Part shown: piece after piece, positions 58,934-64,000 of the stretch | Position numbering within the stretch: position 1 is the stretch's first letter | How the letters are laid out: every line of letters begins with the position of its first letter | Virus record (IMG/VR): IMGVR_UViG_3300033997_000243 | Coordinates: 124,001-188,000 of that record | Strand: one strand, 5' to 3' | Length of the DNA stretch: 64,000 bases | Notes under the pieces: generated by a model | Database searches by the model: none | Told to the model about the DNA's origin: nothing | What the model saw: only the letters and a program-made list of their open reading frames with translations | Made by a program: the position numbers and the translations under genes

Positions 58934-59197
58934 TTACGTTTCCAAATTGAATGTGTCTGAATTCCAAATCACTATTGTTTCCAGTACCTTCGGATCATCC
59001 GTAGAGCCTACAGAGAAACTCGCTCCTTTAGCACAATCAGGTAATTCAGCTGGAACCCAAGAAGCCAATCCGATTTTACGATACTCGCCAGCAGAAATAG
59101 AATCTGGAACAAGTCCAAGCTCTTTAATCTCTTGAGTAGTCATAAACTTTTTAGCATTCTGTTTGATATGATCGAAAGAAATAGAATCAGCTGTCAT
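58934..59197 (-). CDS. hypothetical protein
   Basis: Start moved to MTADSIS (GAGGA). Confidence 0.75.
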   Translation of the reverse strand: MTADSISFDHIKQNAKKFMTTQEIKELGLVPDSISAGEYRKIGLASWVPAELPDCAKGASFSVGSTDDPKVLETIVIWNSDTFNLET

Positions 59198-60176
59198 TTT
59201 TATCCTCACAGATGGCATCAAATTTGCCGTAAAAGAAATCGTGATCAATCGTTTTGTTTTGTCTGTTAATAGTTGCAAGAACAAACTTTTCTTTATTCAT
59301 CATTCTAAAAACACGGGTAACTGCGTCATACGAATTACGATTACTTTCTACAATTTTTTGTTTCGACTCTTCTGGCCCTTTGGTTTCATCAAGAACACGG
59401 TGCATAGGATGGGTAACTAAAGTTTCTACACCGTCAATATTTACGAGTCGTACAAAGTTAAATAAACGCTCAAAGACATTTAATTTATCTTCCAGCGTTT
59501 TGTGAAAGGCAATATGAGTTGCCCATTCAGGTATATAATTGTTATCAAACAAATATTGCAGGTCTGGAACAGAGTAAACACCGTAAGCAGATTTCTGTTC
59601 AAATCTAAATGGAGATCTTGTATACTCCAATTCTTTTAAATAAATACGTTCCAGAATGTTAAGGTGAGTGATCTGGAAAAGTCTACTTAAAATTTCGGTC
59701 TGGAACGAAAGATCTTTTTCGTGAGGGAAACCATCGTAACGAAGAATACTACTTAAGCGTTGTTTTCCGTTAGGTGTATCAACTTTCAACCCGTATAAAT
59801 CTTTTATTTCTCGCAACTTTGACCAACCAACGCCGAAATATTTGGTTAGTACATTCAAAATAGGTTTTGGAATAAGAGCTTCTTCTGCTTCATCTTCTTC
59901 CCTTGAAGAGACTAACACATCATGCTGCTCTGCAAAAAAGAATACTTCTAACGGACATTCGTTTATACCGAGTTGTGGATCTTCTTCACGATGCAACCAA
60001 CACAGAGGTCGAATAGAATAGATACCGTAATTTTTTGAAGGTGGTTTTAGTCCAGCACGTAATTCATCAAGTTTGAAAAGTTTAACACCTGCATCAGTTA
60101 AATCATTCAGCATTGAGTATGCGTTTGCCTGATTTTTTATTGCAGCTTGTTCAATACGAAAAATGTTTATATCCAT
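59187..60176 (-). CDS. hypothetical protein (paralog of 60729..61700)
   Basis: YSVPDL...WATHIAF...ERLF..VR.VNIDG....V.HP. Confidence 0.9.
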   Translation of the reverse strand: MDINIFRIEQAAIKNQANAYSMLNDLTDAGVKLFKLDELRAGLKPPSKNYGIYSIRPLCWLHREEDPQLGINECPLEVFFFAEQHDVLVSSREEDEAEEALIPKPILNVLTKYFGVGWSKLREIKDLYGLKVDTPNGKQRLSSILRYDGFPHEKDLSFQTEILSRLFQITHLNILERIYLKELEYTRSPFRFEQKSAYGVYSVPDLQYLFDNNYIPEWATHIAFHKTLEDKLNVFERLFNFVRLVNIDGVETLVTHPMHRVLDETKGPEESKQKIVESNRNSYDAVTRVFRMMNKEKFVLATINRQNKTIDHDFFYGKFDAICEDKNDS

Positions 60177-60220
60177 TTTTATTTCCTTTGGCCTTTGTCG
60201 GCACGTTAGTTTAATATGGT

Positions 60221-60742
60221 TTATCCGCCGTAACTTCCGCCGCTGTGTTTGTAGGCAGTTGCTCCAAATCCACCACGGTTTACAACTCCAGCAGCGGTGA
60301 CTGGAACAGAACTTGGATAAACTTTTGTGTGTCCAGTTTTGCTTGCTACCAGTTCATTTGTTGCTGTACGAAAGCCAGAAGGATCATCTTTTGAACGATA
60401 CAGCGGCTGGCTTTGTACAAAAGAACTTGCATTCGATGGATTGGTGGCACTTGACATATAGCCTGACATATACGGCATATAAACAAAGCCTCCACTACTT
60501 CCAGCGGTTGCCTCGCAATTTCCTGCGCCAAAATCTTCAGCGCAATCTTCTGGTTTTGTGTAACGAGGTGCAACTTGTTTGTGCAGTGCAGTTGCATCAG
60601 CAAAATCTTTCAAACACTTTTCTTTGTTGTAGTATGCAGCACATTGACCAACATTCTCAGACACTACTGGATAAACTGGTTCTTCACAGCCAGCCAATCC
60701 AGCTGTCATTAACACAAGAACAACTTTACTACTGCGCTTCAT
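60221..60742 (-). CDS. DUF1190 / YgiB-family lipoprotein
   Basis: MKRSS + lipobox LAGC; C..A...H...APRY....DC..DFG.GNC, MPYMSGYM, SQPLYRS, RGGFG and Gly/Ser tail. Confidence 0.88.
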   Translation of the reverse strand: MKRSSKVVLVLMTAGLAGCEEPVYPVVSENVGQCAAYYNKEKCLKDFADATALHKQVAPRYTKPEDCAEDFGAGNCEATAGSSGGFVYMPYMSGYMSSATNPSNASSFVQSQPLYRSKDDPSGFRTATNELVASKTGHTKVYPSSVPVTAAGVVNRGGFGATAYKHSGGSYGG

Positions 60743-61700
60743 AGCATTCCTCGAAAGTTTTGTTGTCATATAAAGGTTTAGCAATGTTTAAAAAGAATTC
60801 ATCCATTGTAACAAACTCATATTCATCTTTACGGAAAAAACGGATTGTACGTAAAGATTCTGTATAAGCAACTTTGTTGTGTTCAATAATTTCATTTGCT
60901 TCTCGCAAATACTCGCCATGAATTTTTGAGTTTTCAGTACAGCCAAGTTTACTAAGGTGCTGTGGCGAAGTATTTAAAAATGGTTTGAATTTTGGAACTG
61001 GATGGCGAACCATTAATTGTTCACCATCTAAATTTACGCAACGGGCAAGAACAAACATACGCTCACGTAAGTTTATTTCGGATTCATCAGATTTCATGTA
61101 ACCAACATGAGTGGCCCAAGGCAAAGAATACTGACTCACAATCAAGTCAGTAATATCCTCAACTGAATACTGACAATAATGTTCGGTACGCACTAATCGA
61201 GTTGGCGGTTCCATTGTACTGGATGGTTTGCGAATGAAAAGACGTTCAAGGAATTGAACACGTTGAGCCTTATTACAGAATTCAAAAAGTTGGTCAGGAT
61301 CTAAAACAGTTGAAAGTCGAACCATGACATCATGTTCAGGATGCAAGAAGTTTCCTAAATAAACAAGAACAGCACTTAGCTTGTTTTCATTGATTAGGCT
61401 GGCTGGAACTTTTTCTTCTTTTAGTGTTTTTAGAGCTTGCTTTGAAATGCCTGTTGTCATTGTTGACGGATCAACAGCATCAATTGTCAGTGCAAAGAAT
61501 ATCTTTTCAGTTTGCAACAACAGTTTATTAACTGAATCAGGAGTCTGTGGAAGTAAAGCACCCAACGAAAAGATTGCATTCGCGTACTGACTGACATTAA
61601 AGTTTTTACGCAAATCTTGTGCGCTAAAAAAATTAACACCAGCTGCTTGTAATATTTCACGAAGCTCTAAAGCGATTTCTGTTTTGGTTTTAATAGTCAT
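60729..61700 (-). CDS. hypothetical protein (paralog of 59187..60176)
   Basis: YSVEDI...WATHVGY...ERMF..AR.VNLDG....V.HP; GGAGG RBS. Confidence 0.9.
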   Translation of the reverse strand: MTIKTKTEIALELREILQAAGVNFFSAQDLRKNFNVSQYANAIFSLGALLPQTPDSVNKLLLQTEKIFFALTIDAVDPSTMTTGISKQALKTLKEEKVPASLINENKLSAVLVYLGNFLHPEHDVMVRLSTVLDPDQLFEFCNKAQRVQFLERLFIRKPSSTMEPPTRLVRTEHYCQYSVEDITDLIVSQYSLPWATHVGYMKSDESEINLRERMFVLARCVNLDGEQLMVRHPVPKFKPFLNTSPQHLSKLGCTENSKIHGEYLREANEIIEHNKVAYTESLRTIRFFRKDEYEFVTMDEFFLNIAKPLYDNKTFEECYEAQ

Positions 61701-61735
61701 AGTATGTTGCCTCCATTGGCTCTGTATACATAGTC

Positions 61736-61746
61736 TGATTTACAGT
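61736..61746 (-). promoter_or_regulatory. ACTGTAAATCA intergenic motif, copy 4
   Basis: Exact 11-mer 4 nt after the stop, 36 nt before the next ATG. Confidence 0.55.
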
Positions 61747-61750
61747 ATCA

Positions 61751-62230
61751 TTAAACTAAAGCGAGTTCTTTTGCTTTGGTGATATTCCAACCAAGTTGTT
61801 CAAAATGCTCGGCCAGTGGAATAACTCCTTTACCTGAGTATAACTGTTTTGGAATTTCTCCACCACGGGAAACCAAGATCTCAAGCCAGTGATTTGGACA
61901 GACGACCGCCATAAATTTCTCCATAGCCAGCACAAGATCATCCGGTGTATTTGGATAATCTTCTTCCGTAAATTGAGGCGTATATATAGCATAGCCTTTA
62001 CCGCTATCTATCTTCTGACTTTCTTGAGTTCTTTTCGGTAATAACAATCGATAGTTTTTGTTATCACACAATTGAATAGATGCAAGTTCAAATATATTAC
62101 TGTAGCTAAATTTACCTTCGCTAACATTCATACTGTATACCAGTACGGAAATTTTTTGAGAGCAAACATCTACAATAATCTTTGGATAGTCATCTTCCTT
62201 GTATGGGTTCTTATCGTACTCAAAGTGCAT
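61751..62230 (-). CDS. hypothetical protein
   Basis: GAGGGA RBS. Confidence 0.85.
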   Translation of the reverse strand: MHFEYDKNPYKEDDYPKIIVDVCSQKISVLVYSMNVSEGKFSYSNIFELASIQLCDNKNYRLLLPKRTQESQKIDSGKGYAIYTPQFTEEDYPNTPDDLVLAMEKFMAVVCPNHWLEILVSRGGEIPKQLYSGKGVIPLAEHFEQLGWNITKAKELALV

Positions 62231-62270
62231 TAACTTTCCCTCTGAATATAACCTAAGCTTTTACACTCGC

Positions 62271-62732
62271 TTACTGTTGGTTCGTACCTTCAACACCGCG
62301 CTGTTTGCGATCTTGTGTTCGTGCATCCAACCAATGCAATGCACTTACAATATGTTGCAGCGCTTGTTCATTGGAATTACAAGCGAACGGGCCAGCTTGA
62401 AAACCACGAAGTCGGTGAGCGCATATTACCAAAAGATCTTCCATTTGAATTCCATTGACACCATGTTCGTTGATTGGGCCATTTTGGAAATTAATGGCGG
62501 CAAGACAAATACTTTGTTCACCGTTAAAAGCGCTTACACTGTAAACATGATTTGCATTACCGTGAGTTGGTAAATCGTCAGCAGTTACAATTGTGTACTC
62601 TGTTTTACGAATAGCTAAAACAGCTTGCTTTTGTTCGGCATCGTAATCTTCCATTGCCTGTGTAATCTTTTCAGCAGTAACTTCACCATCTACTGCAATG
62701 AAAATAGTTCCTTTTGTTGGATCATCACTCAT
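62271..62732 (-). CDS. tad1: Tad1-family anti-defence sponge protein (Thoeris gcADPR / cyclic-oligonucleotide binding)
   Basis: GNANHVY...INFQNGP...GVNGI..EDLL.I..HRLRGFQAGPFAC..NE.AL.HI..AL.WL..RT.DR..RGVEGT, the Tad1 signature recognised by eye. Confidence 0.85.
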   Translation of the reverse strand: MSDDPTKGTIFIAVDGEVTAEKITQAMEDYDAEQKQAVLAIRKTEYTIVTADDLPTHGNANHVYSVSAFNGEQSICLAAINFQNGPINEHGVNGIQMEDLLVICAHRLRGFQAGPFACNSNEQALQHIVSALHWLDARTQDRKQRGVEGTNQQ

Positions 62733-63166
62733 TCACTGACCTCGACTTCTTGCAATTGCTCTAAGGGTTCAAAAGTTGATTTGACTCCCATAAGCTTGCG
62801 TACTTGATCCATTGCCATTTCACCACGAACAGGTGTAACGCTTAAATACAAATAGTTGTATTCAGTGTGATCTGGATCTTCTGGATTTACATACTGAAGA
62901 AGTTCACCAGCTTTCCATTGATAATGATACATGCCAACGACTTTTGTTTCTTCCACTGGATTGCTACTGTTTGAAATAGCATTTACTACACGTTCAAACA
63001 GGTCGGCTGAATAACTGGCCTTTGGGTTGTTCAACCACAAACACTTTTTGTCGAAGTCAACATAAGCCGTGAAATCCGGTAAACTGTGGAGACAGTGAAC
63101 TTCTACAGTCCATCCAGCAGATTCTAAAGTTTCTTTGTGTTGCTCAATAATGCCTGAGTATGACAT
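62729..63166 (-). CDS. hypothetical protein (domain shared with 46008..47087)
   Basis: LESAGWTVEV...AYVDFDKKCLWLN. Confidence 0.8.
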   Translation of the reverse strand: MSYSGIIEQHKETLESAGWTVEVHCLHSLPDFTAYVDFDKKCLWLNNPKASYSADLFERVVNAISNSSNPVEETKVVGMYHYQWKAGELLQYVNPEDPDHTEYNYLYLSVTPVRGEMAMDQVRKLMGVKSTFEPLEQLQEVEVSE

Positions 63167-63199
63167 TTGATTTTCCTTCTAATTGGTGGGTTAAAGTTA

Positions 63200-63991
63200 T
63201 TAAATTTTACAGGCTCCGCCTTCGCAATCTTCCATATCTTCATCTTGTGTTTGAATTTCGATTAAAACATCTGGTATTTCCAGAGAATCAAAATCAACTA
63301 AGGCAAAGTCATCGTCTTTACCTGCTTCAGCACTTAAAGGCAATGTTAATACAAGAACTGGTTGATTCATGTTCACATAAATGCCGAATTGTGCATTTAA
63401 GCATGAGTGAGTTTCACCATGATCGCTGACACTGTAACTACCTTCACGGGTAAATGTTCCTAAAGGAGTATCAGCTGGAAAAATGAAGATTTTGTTTCTC
63501 AGATTTTGCATGTGTTTGGGAAATAAGCCGTCTGTTACTAAAGACACTTCAATATCTTTAATTTTCAAATCAGCTATTTCACCATTCTGCACTAACAAAT
63601 GTTGGTTTTTCGGTTGAAAATGGTTAAACCAAGATTCTTGTTCACTGATAGATGAAAATCCAAGTTCACCAGCCAGCATAATAAATTCTACGCTGTCCTC
63701 AAAATCATCTACTGATTTAATAGCTTCGTAAATAGCATCAGGGGTGAATTGTTTTTCAAGATTAAATTGGTGACTCGCACCATCCAATGTCCAAGACATT
63801 ACTCGATTTTCAAATCCAACCCCAATTTGCTTGTCAGCTTCTGCCTCAAGATGTTCATTCGACATAACTATAGAATCACTTCTCGTTGTAATAAAGCCGT
63901 TCAGCTTAACTCGCTTAAAGAATCGGCGCAACAAATTTGCAGGTTGATCCAAGTTATTCAATACGTTAGTTAAAACAGTAGTTTTGTCCAT
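63200..63991 (-). CDS. hypothetical acidic protein ending in an NrdA-like redox tail
   Basis: C-terminus QDEDMEDCEGGACKI; AGGTG RBS. Confidence 0.85.
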   Translation of the reverse strand: MDKTTVLTNVLNNLDQPANLLRRFFKRVKLNGFITTRSDSIVMSNEHLEAEADKQIGVGFENRVMSWTLDGASHQFNLEKQFTPDAIYEAIKSVDDFEDSVEFIMLAGELGFSSISEQESWFNHFQPKNQHLLVQNGEIADLKIKDIEVSLVTDGLFPKHMQNLRNKIFIFPADTPLGTFTREGSYSVSDHGETHSCLNAQFGIYVNMNQPVLVLTLPLSAEAGKDDDFALVDFDSLEIPDVLIEIQTQDEDMEDCEGGACKI

Positions 63992-64000
63992 TTCGCACCT

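What the first reader, a model, noticed from the sequence alone, without database searches (positions are those of the whole stretch)
62271..62732. Tad1 anti-Thoeris/anti-CBASS sponge with an N-terminal extension
Seen: near-complete Tad1 signature (FQNGP, DLL.I..HRL.GFQAGPF, AL.WL..RT.DR..RGVEGT) preceded by a longer N-terminal segment than I expect. Known: Tad1 sequesters gcADPR and some cyclic oligonucleotides. This marks the region as anti-defence-rich, so the small unknown neighbours (61751, 62729, 63200) become candidates by association.
Basis: partly seen in the sequence, partly recalled or inferred. Interest (0 to 1): 0.6.

Follow-up and report, generated by a model that had tools for sequence, protein, structure and literature searches.

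The report
Jumbo-phage Tad1 sponge beside capsid-like gene
The gene is a genuine member of the known Tad1 family of phage "sponge" proteins that soak up bacterial immune signals. Here it sits in a 320-kb uncultured phage, has a short extra N-terminal tail, has lost the residues used for cyclic trinucleotides, and lies next to a miniature copy of the phage's own capsid protein that a sister phage has fused to Tad1.

Summary
ORF 62271-62732 (minus strand, 153 aa) carries the quoted motifs. It matches solved Tad1 structures by sequence (CmTad1, E 1.6e-19) and by predicted fold (TM about 0.8). A homodimer is predicted (0.82 against 0.00 for the best control).

All four gcADPR/cyclic-dinucleotide pocket residues are kept. 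Both cyclic-trinucleotide/hexamer residues are replaced (R to N, T to Q). I therefore predict anti-Thoeris activity, possibly cyclic-dinucleotide binding, and no cA3/cAAG sequestration.

The N-terminal overhang is about 33 aa. It is probably translated: M1 has a well-placed Shine-Dalgarno motif and an ATGA overlap with the upstream gene, while M27 has no such motif. It is specific to this lineage, weakly constrained and poorly modelled.

No neighbour matches a known anti-defence family. Two results stand out:
- The 263-aa gene (63200-63991) is a divergent HK97-fold paralogue of the phage's own major capsid protein. A sister phage fuses such a domain to Tad1 (379 aa).
- The 159-aa gene (61751-62230) is a 522-bp presence/absence polymorphism in the phage population.

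Tad1 in a jumbo phage with a capsid-anchoring N-terminus is already known (phiKZ gp184). This is a new member of that family with an interesting capsid-like link.

The parts
62271..62732 (-). Tad1-family gene, 153 aa (whole ORF)
   Evidence: ORF. PDB phmmer to CmTad1/CbTad1. PHROG 2428. AF2 model with Foldseek top hits all Tad1, TM by target about 0.8. Single copy in the 319.5-kb genome.
62271..62600 (-). Tad1 core, residues 45-153. Pocket residues F111, N121, R138, R142 are kept. Trinucleotide/hexamer residues are changed to N119 and Q126.
   Evidence: Alignments mapped on the residues named in the paper. Column counts over 120 homologues. pLDDT 85-98 over residues 51-140. Predicted dimer interface spans residues 41-141.
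62601..62732 (-). Lineage-specific N-terminal extension, residues 1-44 (about 33 aa beyond canonical Tad1). Acidic, low model confidence.
   Evidence: Shared only with P0001/L002 and L003. pLDDT below 50 for residues 1-17 and 54-58 for 21-40. Not in the predicted dimer interface. Changes in codons 1-26 among the three variants are at four codons: three non-synonymous, one synonymous, no indels. pI 4.4.
62740..62743 (-). Shine-Dalgarno GAGG at -11 of the M1 start. The ATG at 62730-62732 overlaps the upstream gene's TGA stop at 62729-62731 (ATGA).
   Evidence: 45 of 59 ATG-started genes in the window have a core SD motif between -16 and -8. M27, the only other in-frame start in the first 60 codons, has none. 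The motif is conserved in L002 and L003.
62729..63166 (-). 145-aa gene translationally coupled to Tad1; function unknown
   Evidence: ORF. No Pfam/PHROG/NCBIfam hit. Only two homologous clusters in 5.8 billion proteins. Syntenic in L002, L003 and L017. Absent from L019.
63200..63991 (-). 263-aa divergent HK97-fold paralogue of the phage's major capsid protein, with a disordered acidic C-terminal tail (about residues 220-263)
   Evidence: AF2 model pTM 0.60, pLDDT 55.5. VIA: all 50 entries shown are HK97-fold capsid or encapsulin shell proteins, Z 7.3-10.4. Foldseek: 15 hits at E <= 0.001, those listed all capsid or encapsulin-type shells. All 8 Atlas rows are capsid families. The family profile hits the genome's true MCP (L035): hmmsearch E 1.2e-5, hhalign probability 86%. 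A paralogous domain is fused to Tad1 in L017.
61749..62270 (-). 522-bp segment carrying the 159-aa ORFan gene (61751-62230); presence/absence polymorphism directly downstream of Tad1
   Evidence: Absent from L002, L003 and L017, where Tad1 runs straight into the conserved spacer before the 323-aa gene. Contigs in runs X2 and X3 join 61748 to 62271 with the L003-type 16 nt between, alongside contigs that carry the gene. No homologue found.
60729..61700 (-). 323-aa conserved gene forming the downstream border of the variable slot
   Evidence: Syntenic in L003, L017 and, at 25% identity, L019. It has a paralogue at 59187-60176.

Best explanation
ORF 62271-62732 encodes a bona fide Tad1-family signal sponge of an uncultured 319.5-kb PaBG/NCTB-like jumbo myovirus from a subsurface metagenome.

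Proposed mechanism:
- Two chains form the canonical Tad1 dimer.
- Its interface pockets, lined by F111, N121, R138 and R142 and closed by the RGVEGT tail, sequester the Thoeris signal gcADPR (3'cADPR). They may also hold some cyclic dinucleotides.
- ThsA-type effectors are therefore never switched on.
- The second Tad1 activity, binding cA3/cAAG at the three-fold interface of the hexamer, is probably lost or re-specified. The phosphate-binding pair R/T is N119/Q126, and most hexamer-interface residues differ from CmTad1.

The gene most likely starts at M1, which gives an acidic N-terminal extension of about 33 aa. The extension is specific to this lineage, weakly constrained and outside the dimer interface.

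Shown here: homology, predicted fold, residue conservation, predicted dimer, gene structure, locus variability.
Inferred: ligand binding, anti-Thoeris activity, loss of trinucleotide binding, translation of the extension.
Further inference, about one chance in three: the extension and the adjacent capsid-protein paralogue tie Tad1 physically to a capsid-like assembly, as the sister phage's fusion suggests.
For: Family membership:
- Sequence: CmTad1 E 1.6e-19, CbTad1 E 1.3e-13; PHROG 2428 E 1.1e-36; 1470 homologues, the 120 listed all carrying precomputed PF24729.
- Fold: AF2 pLDDT 78, with the block means for residues 51-140 at 85-98. The first 14 Foldseek rows shown are all Tad1 structures, TM by target 0.76-0.83.
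- Dimer: ipSAE 0.82 against a best control of 0.00. The mark was reached by 20 of 30 solved pairs and 1 of 23 single chains. Runs agree in at least 98% of contacts, and partner pLDDT is at least 76.

Pockets:
- F111, N121, R138 and R142 are invariant in 120 of 120 homologues. They correspond to CbTad1 F82, N92, R109 and R113, whose mutation abolishes gcADPR and 2'3'-cGAMP binding.
- N119 replaces R/K (106 of 120) and Q126 replaces T (96 of 120). R90A or T97A in CbTad1 lose cA3 binding but keep gcADPR binding.

Start codon: GAGG at -11 and the ATGA overlap for M1; no SD for M27. The ORF and SD are conserved in three variants.

Precedent: phiKZ gp184 is a Tad1 with an N-terminal capsid-wedged part.
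Against: - No binding or infection data exist, and the phage and host are uncultured.
- In a survey of three sponge families (Acb2, Tad1, Tad2), 19 of 84 tested homologues inhibited none of seven defence systems.
- The local Pfam model PF24729.2 does not reach this protein.
- Codons 1-26 vary at four codons (three non-synonymous, one synonymous) among close variants. That is what neutral sequence would show.
- M27 aligns with the start of canonical homologues, so a 127-aa product is possible.
- The dimer prediction may reflect memory of solved Tad1 complexes (caveat).
- Hexamer formation could not be tested.
Confidence: 0.8

Rival explanations
1. The N-terminal extension is an ORF-calling artefact. 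Translation starts at M27 and gives a canonical-length (127 aa) Tad1. Codons 1-26 are merely an open spacer after the upstream gene.
For: - M27 aligns with the initiator Met of typical homologues, and 127 aa fits the family's length range.
- Codons 1-26 vary at four codons (three non-synonymous, one synonymous) among variants, as neutral DNA would.
- Residues 1-17 have pLDDT below 50 and lie outside the predicted interface.
- No other protein of the genome shares the tag.
Against: - M1 has GAGG at -11, the position used by 45 of 59 ATG-started genes in the window, plus an ATGA stop/start overlap. M27 has no SD motif.
- The frame stays open, without indels, in the window, L002, L003 and the contigs of three further runs.
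- Genes in this block are tightly packed.
Confidence: 0.25
2. It has the Tad1 fold but a shifted or lost function. It may bind another nucleotide signal (a different ADPR derivative or only cyclic dinucleotides), or it may be an inactive or purely structural virion component.
For: - Sponge families show wide specificity shifts. In the survey of Acb2, Tad1 and Tad2, 19 of 84 tested homologues inhibited none of seven systems.
- The trinucleotide/hexamer residues are changed.
- Several Bacillus and Lactococcus phage homologues are annotated as structural proteins.
- phiKZ gp184 is a minor capsid protein.
Against: - All four gcADPR-pocket residues and the C-terminal lid motif are invariant.
- Tested Tad1 homologues broadly inhibit type I Thoeris and CBASS.
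- phiKZ gp184 is both capsid-associated and an active Tad1, so being structural does not exclude the sponge function.
Confidence: 0.15
3. The capsid-like neighbour is unrelated to Tad1 function. The fusion in the sister phage is a chance gene merger within a recombination hot spot, and the 263-aa protein is a decaying capsid-gene duplicate.
For: - The slot between the 263-aa and 323-aa genes is highly variable.
- Other jumbo phages fuse Tad1 to unrelated domains, for example cyclophilin in FLC9 gp131.
- The 263-aa model has low confidence (pLDDT 55.5).
Against: - The 263-aa gene keeps a full-length open frame at 55-58% identity across lineages.
- A 231-aa relative exists in a more distant phage.
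- The fusion is seen in two non-identical sequences, P0123 and P0127.
- The free copy and the fused copy coexist in L017.
Confidence: 0.45

Closest known systems
CmTad1 and CbTad1 (Clostridial prophage Tad1; PDB 8KBB-8KBH, 7UAV/7UAW/8SMD)
   Same: Same fold (TM by target 0.76-0.83) and 31-37% identity over the aligned stretch. The gcADPR/cyclic-dinucleotide pocket residues are identical (F, N, R, R). The C-terminal lid motif and the predicted two-helix dimer interface are the same.
   Different: About 33 extra N-terminal residues. The trinucleotide-binding pair R/T is replaced by N/Q. Seven of the eight CmTad1 hexamer-interface residues named in the paper differ. It comes from a Gram-negative-type jumbo phage rather than a Firmicute prophage.
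phiKZ gp184 (Tad1 of a jumbo phage; chain I of PDB 8Y6V)
   Same: A jumbo-phage Tad1 domain at the C-terminus of a longer protein (E 2.1e-11 to residues 75-150). It sets the precedent that an N-terminal addition ties Tad1 to the capsid, with the sponge released by the head protease and injected. A homologue of PaBG's head maturation protease exists in this genome.
   Different: gp184 has about 150 extra residues that are mainly beta-strand and wedge under a hexamer. Here the extension is only about 33-44 aa with no detectable similarity. The capsid link rests on a separate MCP-like gene and on a sister-phage fusion, not on virion data.
SBSphiJ7 Tad1 and the Bacillus SPO1-like/Bastille-like phage homologues
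   Same: Closest matches among deposited phage genomes (44-50% identity over residues 45-153). This is the founding anti-Thoeris sponge family.
   Different: They have the canonical length and no extension. They infect Gram-positive hosts.
Burkholderia jumbo phage FLC9 gp131
   Same: A jumbo-phage protein with a C-terminal Tad1 domain (43% identity).
   Different: Its N-terminal addition is a cyclophilin-type PPIase domain (PF00160, E 2.5e-44). It is unrelated to the extension here and to the MCP-like domain.
HK97-fold major capsid proteins and encapsulin shells (for the 263-aa neighbour)
   Same: The predicted fold matches over about 160-200 residues (Z up to 10.4). There is weak but significant sequence similarity to the A-domain region of the phage's own MCP. 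The size is close to that of encapsulins.
   Different: It lies outside the structural module, inside a block of small genes of unknown function on the opposite strand. It is 111 aa shorter than the real MCP (374 aa). It carries a disordered acidic C-terminal tail. The family has only four representatives among 1.84 billion proteins. Assembly competence is unknown.

Membership tests
Tad1 (Thoeris anti-defence 1) sponge family | Significant sequence similarity to experimentally characterised Tad1 proteins | tested here: met
   phmmer against PDB: 8kbb E 1.6e-19, 7uav E 1.3e-13. PHROG 2428 E 1.1e-36.
Tad1 (Thoeris anti-defence 1) sponge family | Tad1 fold: N-terminal antiparallel beta-sheet plus two long C-terminal helices | tested here: met
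   AF2 model has strands 47-51, 63-69 and 74-82 and helices 97-113 and 119-145. Foldseek top hits are all Tad1, TM by target about 0.8, rmsd 2.1-3.4 A.
Tad1 (Thoeris anti-defence 1) sponge family | gcADPR/cyclic-dinucleotide pocket residues (CbTad1 F82, N92, R109, R113) | tested here: met
   F111, N121, R138 and R142 are present and invariant in 120 of 120 homologues.
Tad1 (Thoeris anti-defence 1) sponge family | Cyclic-trinucleotide pocket residues (CbTad1 R90/T97 = CmTad1 R88/T95) | tested here: not met
   N119 and Q126 stand in their place. 12 of 120 close homologues lack both canonical residues. The source paper reports that about 6% of Tad1 proteins carry substitutions in this site, so this is a feature of most members, not of all.
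Tad1 (Thoeris anti-defence 1) sponge family | Homodimer that forms the ligand pocket | tested here: met
   Predicted only: ipSAE 0.82 against a best control of 0.00; 20 of 30 solved pairs and 1 of 23 single chains reach the mark; at least 98% contact agreement; pLDDT at least 76. The result may reflect memory of solved Tad1 dimers.
Tad1 (Thoeris anti-defence 1) sponge family | Hexamer (trimer of dimers) | not testable with these tools
Seven of the eight CmTad1 interface residues differ by alignment, so the hexamer is in doubt.
Tad1 (Thoeris anti-defence 1) sponge family | Binding of gcADPR and rescue of phage from Thoeris | not testable with these tools
   Needs ITC or native gel assays and plaque assays.
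Pfam PF24729 Acb2/Tad1 hairpin domain | Score above the gathering threshold | tested here: inconclusive
   The local model PF24729.2 gives no hit to the query, to P0001 or to P0002. It reaches exactly the 27-bit cut-off on P0025. The precomputed PF24729.3 hits P0001 (94% identical) and all 120 listed homologues.
HK97-fold capsid/encapsulin shell proteins (263-aa neighbour) | HK97 fold | tested here: met
   All 50 entries shown by VIA (Z 7.3-10.4, 160-200 residues aligned), the listed Foldseek hits at E <= 0.001 (best E 2.8e-5) and all 8 Atlas rows are capsid or encapsulin shell proteins. Caveat: the model is low-confidence (pLDDT 55.5, pTM 0.60, alignment of 7 sequences).
HK97-fold capsid/encapsulin shell proteins (263-aa neighbour) | Sequence relationship to a recognised major capsid protein | tested here: met
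   The family profile against the genome's MCP (phrog_2522, E 1.9e-82): hmmsearch E 1.2e-5 among 1657 ORFs; hhalign probability 86%, E 4.9e-6 over 84 columns. The match is weak and covers only the A-domain region.
HK97-fold capsid/encapsulin shell proteins (263-aa neighbour) | Assembly into capsomers or shells | not testable with these tools
   Needs expression and electron microscopy, or virion proteomics.

The most novel reading that the evidence does not exclude
In this phage lineage Tad1 works together with a miniature paralogue of the major capsid protein. The HK97-fold module is free as the 263-aa protein here and covalently fused to Tad1 in the sister phage. Two roles are possible:
(a) It anchors Tad1 in or on the capsid or a capsid-like particle, so that the sponge is delivered with the genome, as in phiKZ gp184 but by a different, MCP-derived anchor. 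The lineage-specific N-terminal extension of the 153-aa Tad1 would then be the docking peptide.
(b) It acts as a capsid mimic that engages capsid-sensing TIR (ThsB) or CBASS sensors, placing the sponge at the source of the signal or blunting the trigger itself.
Either role would be a new way of coupling a signal sponge to capsid recognition.
Probability: 0.3. Interest if true: 0.75.

Novelty: new member of a known kind. Interest (0 to 1): 0.5.

Why it matters
Tad1 is the only anti-defence protein so far described in jumbo phages (review read). This adds a second, unrelated jumbo-phage lineage (PaBG/NCTB-like, subsurface habitat).

It is also a natural variant that keeps the gcADPR pocket but has lost the trinucleotide/hexamer residues. 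That makes it a ready-made separation-of-function allele for asking what each Tad1 site contributes.

The more interesting lead is the capsid link. Type I Thoeris has been reported to sense phage capsids (cited), and phiKZ ships its Tad1 inside the capsid. An MCP-derived domain encoded beside Tad1, and in a sister phage fused to it, gives a directly testable link between capsid recognition or packaging and signal sequestration.

The 159-aa insertion polymorphism next to Tad1 marks a natural accessory-gene slot that is worth screening for new counter-defence genes.

Tried and rejected
- Local Pfam and NCBIfam scans of Tad1 and six neighbours gave nothing informative except DUF1190.
- Is the extension a capsid-targeting tag shared with other proteins of the genome? 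No similar N-terminus among 1657 ORFs.
- Is the extension a remnant of the sister phage's N-domain or linker? Local alignment scores fall below the shuffled mean and BLASTP finds nothing. Rejected.
- Is FLC9 gp131's N-domain related to the MCP-like family? No. It is a cyclophilin.
- Homologues of the 159-aa protein: none by Atlas features, tblastn against phages, or an IMG/VR pattern scan. The Atlas's own models of the 159-aa and 145-aa proteins are poor (pLDDT 0.42 and 0.48), so their structural neighbours are not meaningful.
- The 145-aa protein's faint Atlas resemblance to M48/M78 peptidases is not supported; the sequence has no HExxH motif.
- Other sponges in the genome: no Tad2 (PF11195) match.
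- Pfam capsid and protease models PF07068, PF05065 and PF03420 found nothing in the genome. The MCP and the protease were found by the family profile and by the PaBG protein instead.
- megablast and tblastn of the region and of the 739-aa protein against deposited phages: no match.
- Promoter/terminator scan of 61500-64000: no promoter-like site, and the four terminator-like sites lie inside genes.
- No RNA evidence. The only possible RNA libraries hold short pieces of the 263-aa gene.
- The L019 slot genes are unrelated to Tad1 and to the 145-aa protein.

Only genetic code 11 was used.
Full report
**Setting.** The window is bases 124001-188000 of a 319,518-bp IMG/VR virus record with direct terminal repeats, estimated complete, with 37.6% G+C. 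It is a jumbo myovirus.
- Its tail sheath is 47% identical to phage NCTB and 45% to Pseudomonas phage PaBG.
- Its major capsid protein (G000:C1:75223-76347, 374 aa, phrog_2522 E 1.9e-82) is 43-49% identical to those of PaBG, Lu11 and NCTB.
- Nearly all the ORFs of 100 aa or more in the window (95 of 102) lie on the minus strand and are tightly packed.
- The locus is held almost identically by four subsurface-metagenome runs of one study. The host is unknown.

**The observation.** ORF 62271-62732 (minus strand, 153 aa, ATG) exists as described and contains the quoted motifs.
- It matches solved Tad1 chains by sequence: CmTad1 8kbb E 1.6e-19 over residues 45-152, CbTad1 7uav E 1.3e-13, and phiKZ gp184 (8y6v chain I) E 2.1e-11.
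- It matches PHROG 2428 at E 1.1e-36.
- A word search found 1470 homologues. The 120 listed all carry the precomputed Pfam domain PF24729, Acb2/Tad1 hairpin.
- The older local model PF24729.2 misses the query. This is a sensitivity issue, not evidence against membership.
- An AlphaFold2 model built on 121 sequences has mean pLDDT 78, with the block means for residues 51-140 at 85-98. Its first 14 Foldseek rows shown are all Tad1 structures, with TM by target 0.76-0.83 and rmsd 2.1-3.4 A.
- The genome has a single copy.

**Pocket residues.** The paper on Tad1 and Tad2 names two sets of residues.
- CbTad1 F82, N92, R109 and R113 form the pocket shared by gcADPR and 2'3'-cGAMP.
- CbTad1 R90/T97 (CmTad1 R88/T95) bind the phosphates of cA3/cAAG at the three-fold interface and also contribute to hexamer formation.

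The HMMER alignments, once the tag offsets are removed (+1 for 7uav, +10 for 8kbb), map these onto the query. The offsets are confirmed because every residue named in the paper falls on the right letter.
- The gcADPR pocket corresponds to F111, N121, R138 and R142. All four are invariant in 120 of 120 homologues.
- The trinucleotide pair corresponds to N119 and Q126. The homologues have R or K in 106 of 120 and T in 96 of 120. Only 12 of 120 lack both.
- Of the eight CmTad1 hexamer-interface residues named in the paper, only the Trp is kept.

A homodimer is predicted with ipSAE 0.82 against 0.00 for the best of three controls. The mark was reached by 20 of 30 solved pairs and 1 of 23 single chains. 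Runs agree in at least 98% of contacts, and partner pLDDT is at least 76. The interface covers residues 41-141. Such a pass may partly be memory of solved Tad1 dimers.

I therefore predict gcADPR sequestration, possibly cyclic-dinucleotide binding (which varies between homologues), and loss or re-specification of cA3/cAAG binding. The hexamer is in doubt.

**The N-terminal extension.** Homologues have a median length of 123 aa. The overhang relative to native CmTad1 and CbTad1 is 33-34 residues.
- Only P0001 (94% identical; 983-bp JGI contig L002) and IMG/VR locus L003 (97% identical) share it.
- There are only two in-frame start codons in the first 60 codons, M1 and M27. M27 aligns with the initiator of canonical homologues.
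- M1 has GAGG at -11, the position used by 45 of 59 ATG-started genes in the window, and overlaps the upstream stop (ATGA). M27 has no SD motif. Both features of M1 are conserved in L002 and L003.
- Against this, codons 1-26 vary at four codons (three non-synonymous, one synonymous) among the three variants, while codons 45-153 show 11-15 synonymous against 3-6 non-synonymous changes per pair. The first 26 codons are thus barely constrained.
- Residues 1-17 are modelled below pLDDT 50, and the extension is outside the predicted interface.
- The extension is acidic, pI 4.4. It resembles no other N-terminus in the genome.

I put about 0.7 on M1 being used.

**Precedent.** In phiKZ, gp184 is Tad1. 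Its N-terminal part is wedged under a capsid hexamer. The protein is cut by the head protease, and the Tad1 part is reported to be injected at the next infection.
- Burkholderia jumbo phage FLC9 gp131 (338 aa) is a cyclophilin-Tad1 fusion.
- Several Bacillus and Lactococcus phage homologues are annotated as structural proteins.

N-terminal additions to Tad1 in large phages are therefore a recurring theme rather than a novelty in themselves.

**The neighbours.** None of seven neighbouring proteins hits an informative family, apart from a DUF1190 lipoprotein. The genome has no Tad2 match. 'Anti-defence-rich' is therefore not shown. Comparison with relatives is nevertheless informative. The slot between the 263-aa gene and the 323-aa gene is variable:

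| Phage or contig | Genes in the slot |
|---|---|
| This window | 145 aa, Tad1 (153 aa), 159 aa |
| L002 and L003 | 145 aa (cut at the contig end in L002), Tad1 |
| L017 (329-kb ENA contig, sister phage) | 140 aa, a 379-aa Tad1 |
| L019 (more distant) | three unrelated genes, no Tad1 |

*The 159-aa gene.* It occupies a 522-bp segment. In runs X2 and X3, contigs with this segment and contigs without it coexist, and the joint is identical to the L003 junction. Contig depths are 56.8 with against 205.9 without in X3, and 8.41 against 4.84 in X2. Contig depths are only rough guides. The protein has no detectable relatives.

*The 263-aa gene.*
- The N-terminal 250 residues or so of the 379-aa Tad1 of L017 (P0123; a second non-identical copy is P0127) form a distant paralogue of the 263-aa protein encoded two genes upstream of Tad1 in both phages. 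Identity is 20-24%, with pairwise E of 5e-9 and 2e-11.
- The family is tiny. An exhaustive profile search of 1.84 billion representatives found four proteins.
- Its AlphaFold2 model is of low confidence (pLDDT 55.5, pTM 0.60, seven sequences). Even so, every search returns the same fold. All 50 entries shown by VIA are HK97-type capsid or encapsulin shells (Z 7.3-10.4). Foldseek gives 15 hits at E <= 0.001, the listed ones all capsid or encapsulin-type shells. All eight Atlas rows are capsid families.
- Independently, the family's sequence profile picks out the phage's own major capsid protein among 1657 genome ORFs (E 1.2e-5). hhalign gives 86% probability over the A-domain region.

The 263-aa protein is thus a miniature, divergent paralogue of the capsid protein. 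It lies far from the structural module, and its kind is fused to Tad1 in a sister phage. A homologue of PaBG's annotated head maturation protease is present.

**Interpretation.** The core claim is that this is a Tad1 sponge for gcADPR. It is well supported (0.8) but rests on inference from conserved residues.

The capsid link is a lead, not a finding (about 0.3). It could mean virion or particle anchoring, as in phiKZ. Because type I Thoeris is reported to sense capsids, it could instead mean a capsid mimic acting on the sensor.

Two things count against a simple packaging model. I found no similarity between the extension and any part of the fusion. And, from my own recollection and not tested here, C-termini of encapsulin and some coat proteins face outward.

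**Limits.**
- The phage is uncultured and there is no RNA or protein evidence.
- The hexamer state could not be modelled.

Noticed in passing
window 59187-61700 (minus strand): Two paralogous genes (329 aa and 323 aa; 27% identity over 197 residues, E 8e-15) flank a DUF1190 lipoprotein-like gene (60221-60784; Pfam E 1.5e-26, PHROG 3739). The arrangement is conserved in L003 and L017, and a 314-aa relative occurs in L019. Function unknown.
   Followed up: partly
window 61701-61750 (minus strand); L003:4463-4526; L017:7578-7628: The spacer in front of the 323-aa gene is conserved almost letter for letter across the window, L002, L003 and L017. It contains a short inverted repeat (CTGTA...TACAG). 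The 522-bp insertion lands exactly at its upstream edge. It may be a regulatory or recombination site.
   Followed up: no
L021:832-1848 (Burkholderia phage FLC9 gp131): A 338-aa protein annotated as hypothetical is a fusion of a cyclophilin-type PPIase domain (PF00160, E 2.5e-44) with a C-terminal Tad1 domain.
   Followed up: partly
L024:32114-32347 (Pseudomonas phage PaBG gp302): The related jumbo phage PaBG is annotated with a DUF2829 (Tad2-like) protein. This genome has Tad1 and no PF11195 match, so related phages may carry different sponges.
   Followed up: no
window 63163-63661, runs X5-X8: Wastewater 'METAGENOMIC RNA-Seq' libraries of a second study hold 151-169-nt contigs that are 99-100% identical to parts of the 263-aa capsid-like gene only. 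Elsewhere in the locus X5 gives only short, poorly matching pieces (35-41 nt with 5 differences). Whether this is RNA, and why only this gene appears, is unexplained.
   Followed up: no
G000:C1:39594-41288 and 77692-79317 (L007, L028): The genome encodes two tail-sheath paralogues, both PHROG 23 (E 4e-65 and 1e-70). PaBG is annotated the same way.
   Followed up: no
window 62271-62732; Pfam PF24729: The local Pfam model PF24729.2 (58 positions) fails to detect this clear Tad1 and several close homologues. The precomputed PF24729.3 detects them. Scans that rely on the older model will under-call Tad1 and Acb2.
   Followed up: yes
window 63200-63330 (C-terminal tail of the 263-aa protein): The capsid-like protein ends in a disordered, very acidic tail. 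The last eight residues include two cysteines and are identical in all four full-length members of the family. In the sister phage's fusion this tail is replaced by a linker plus Tad1.
   Followed up: partly
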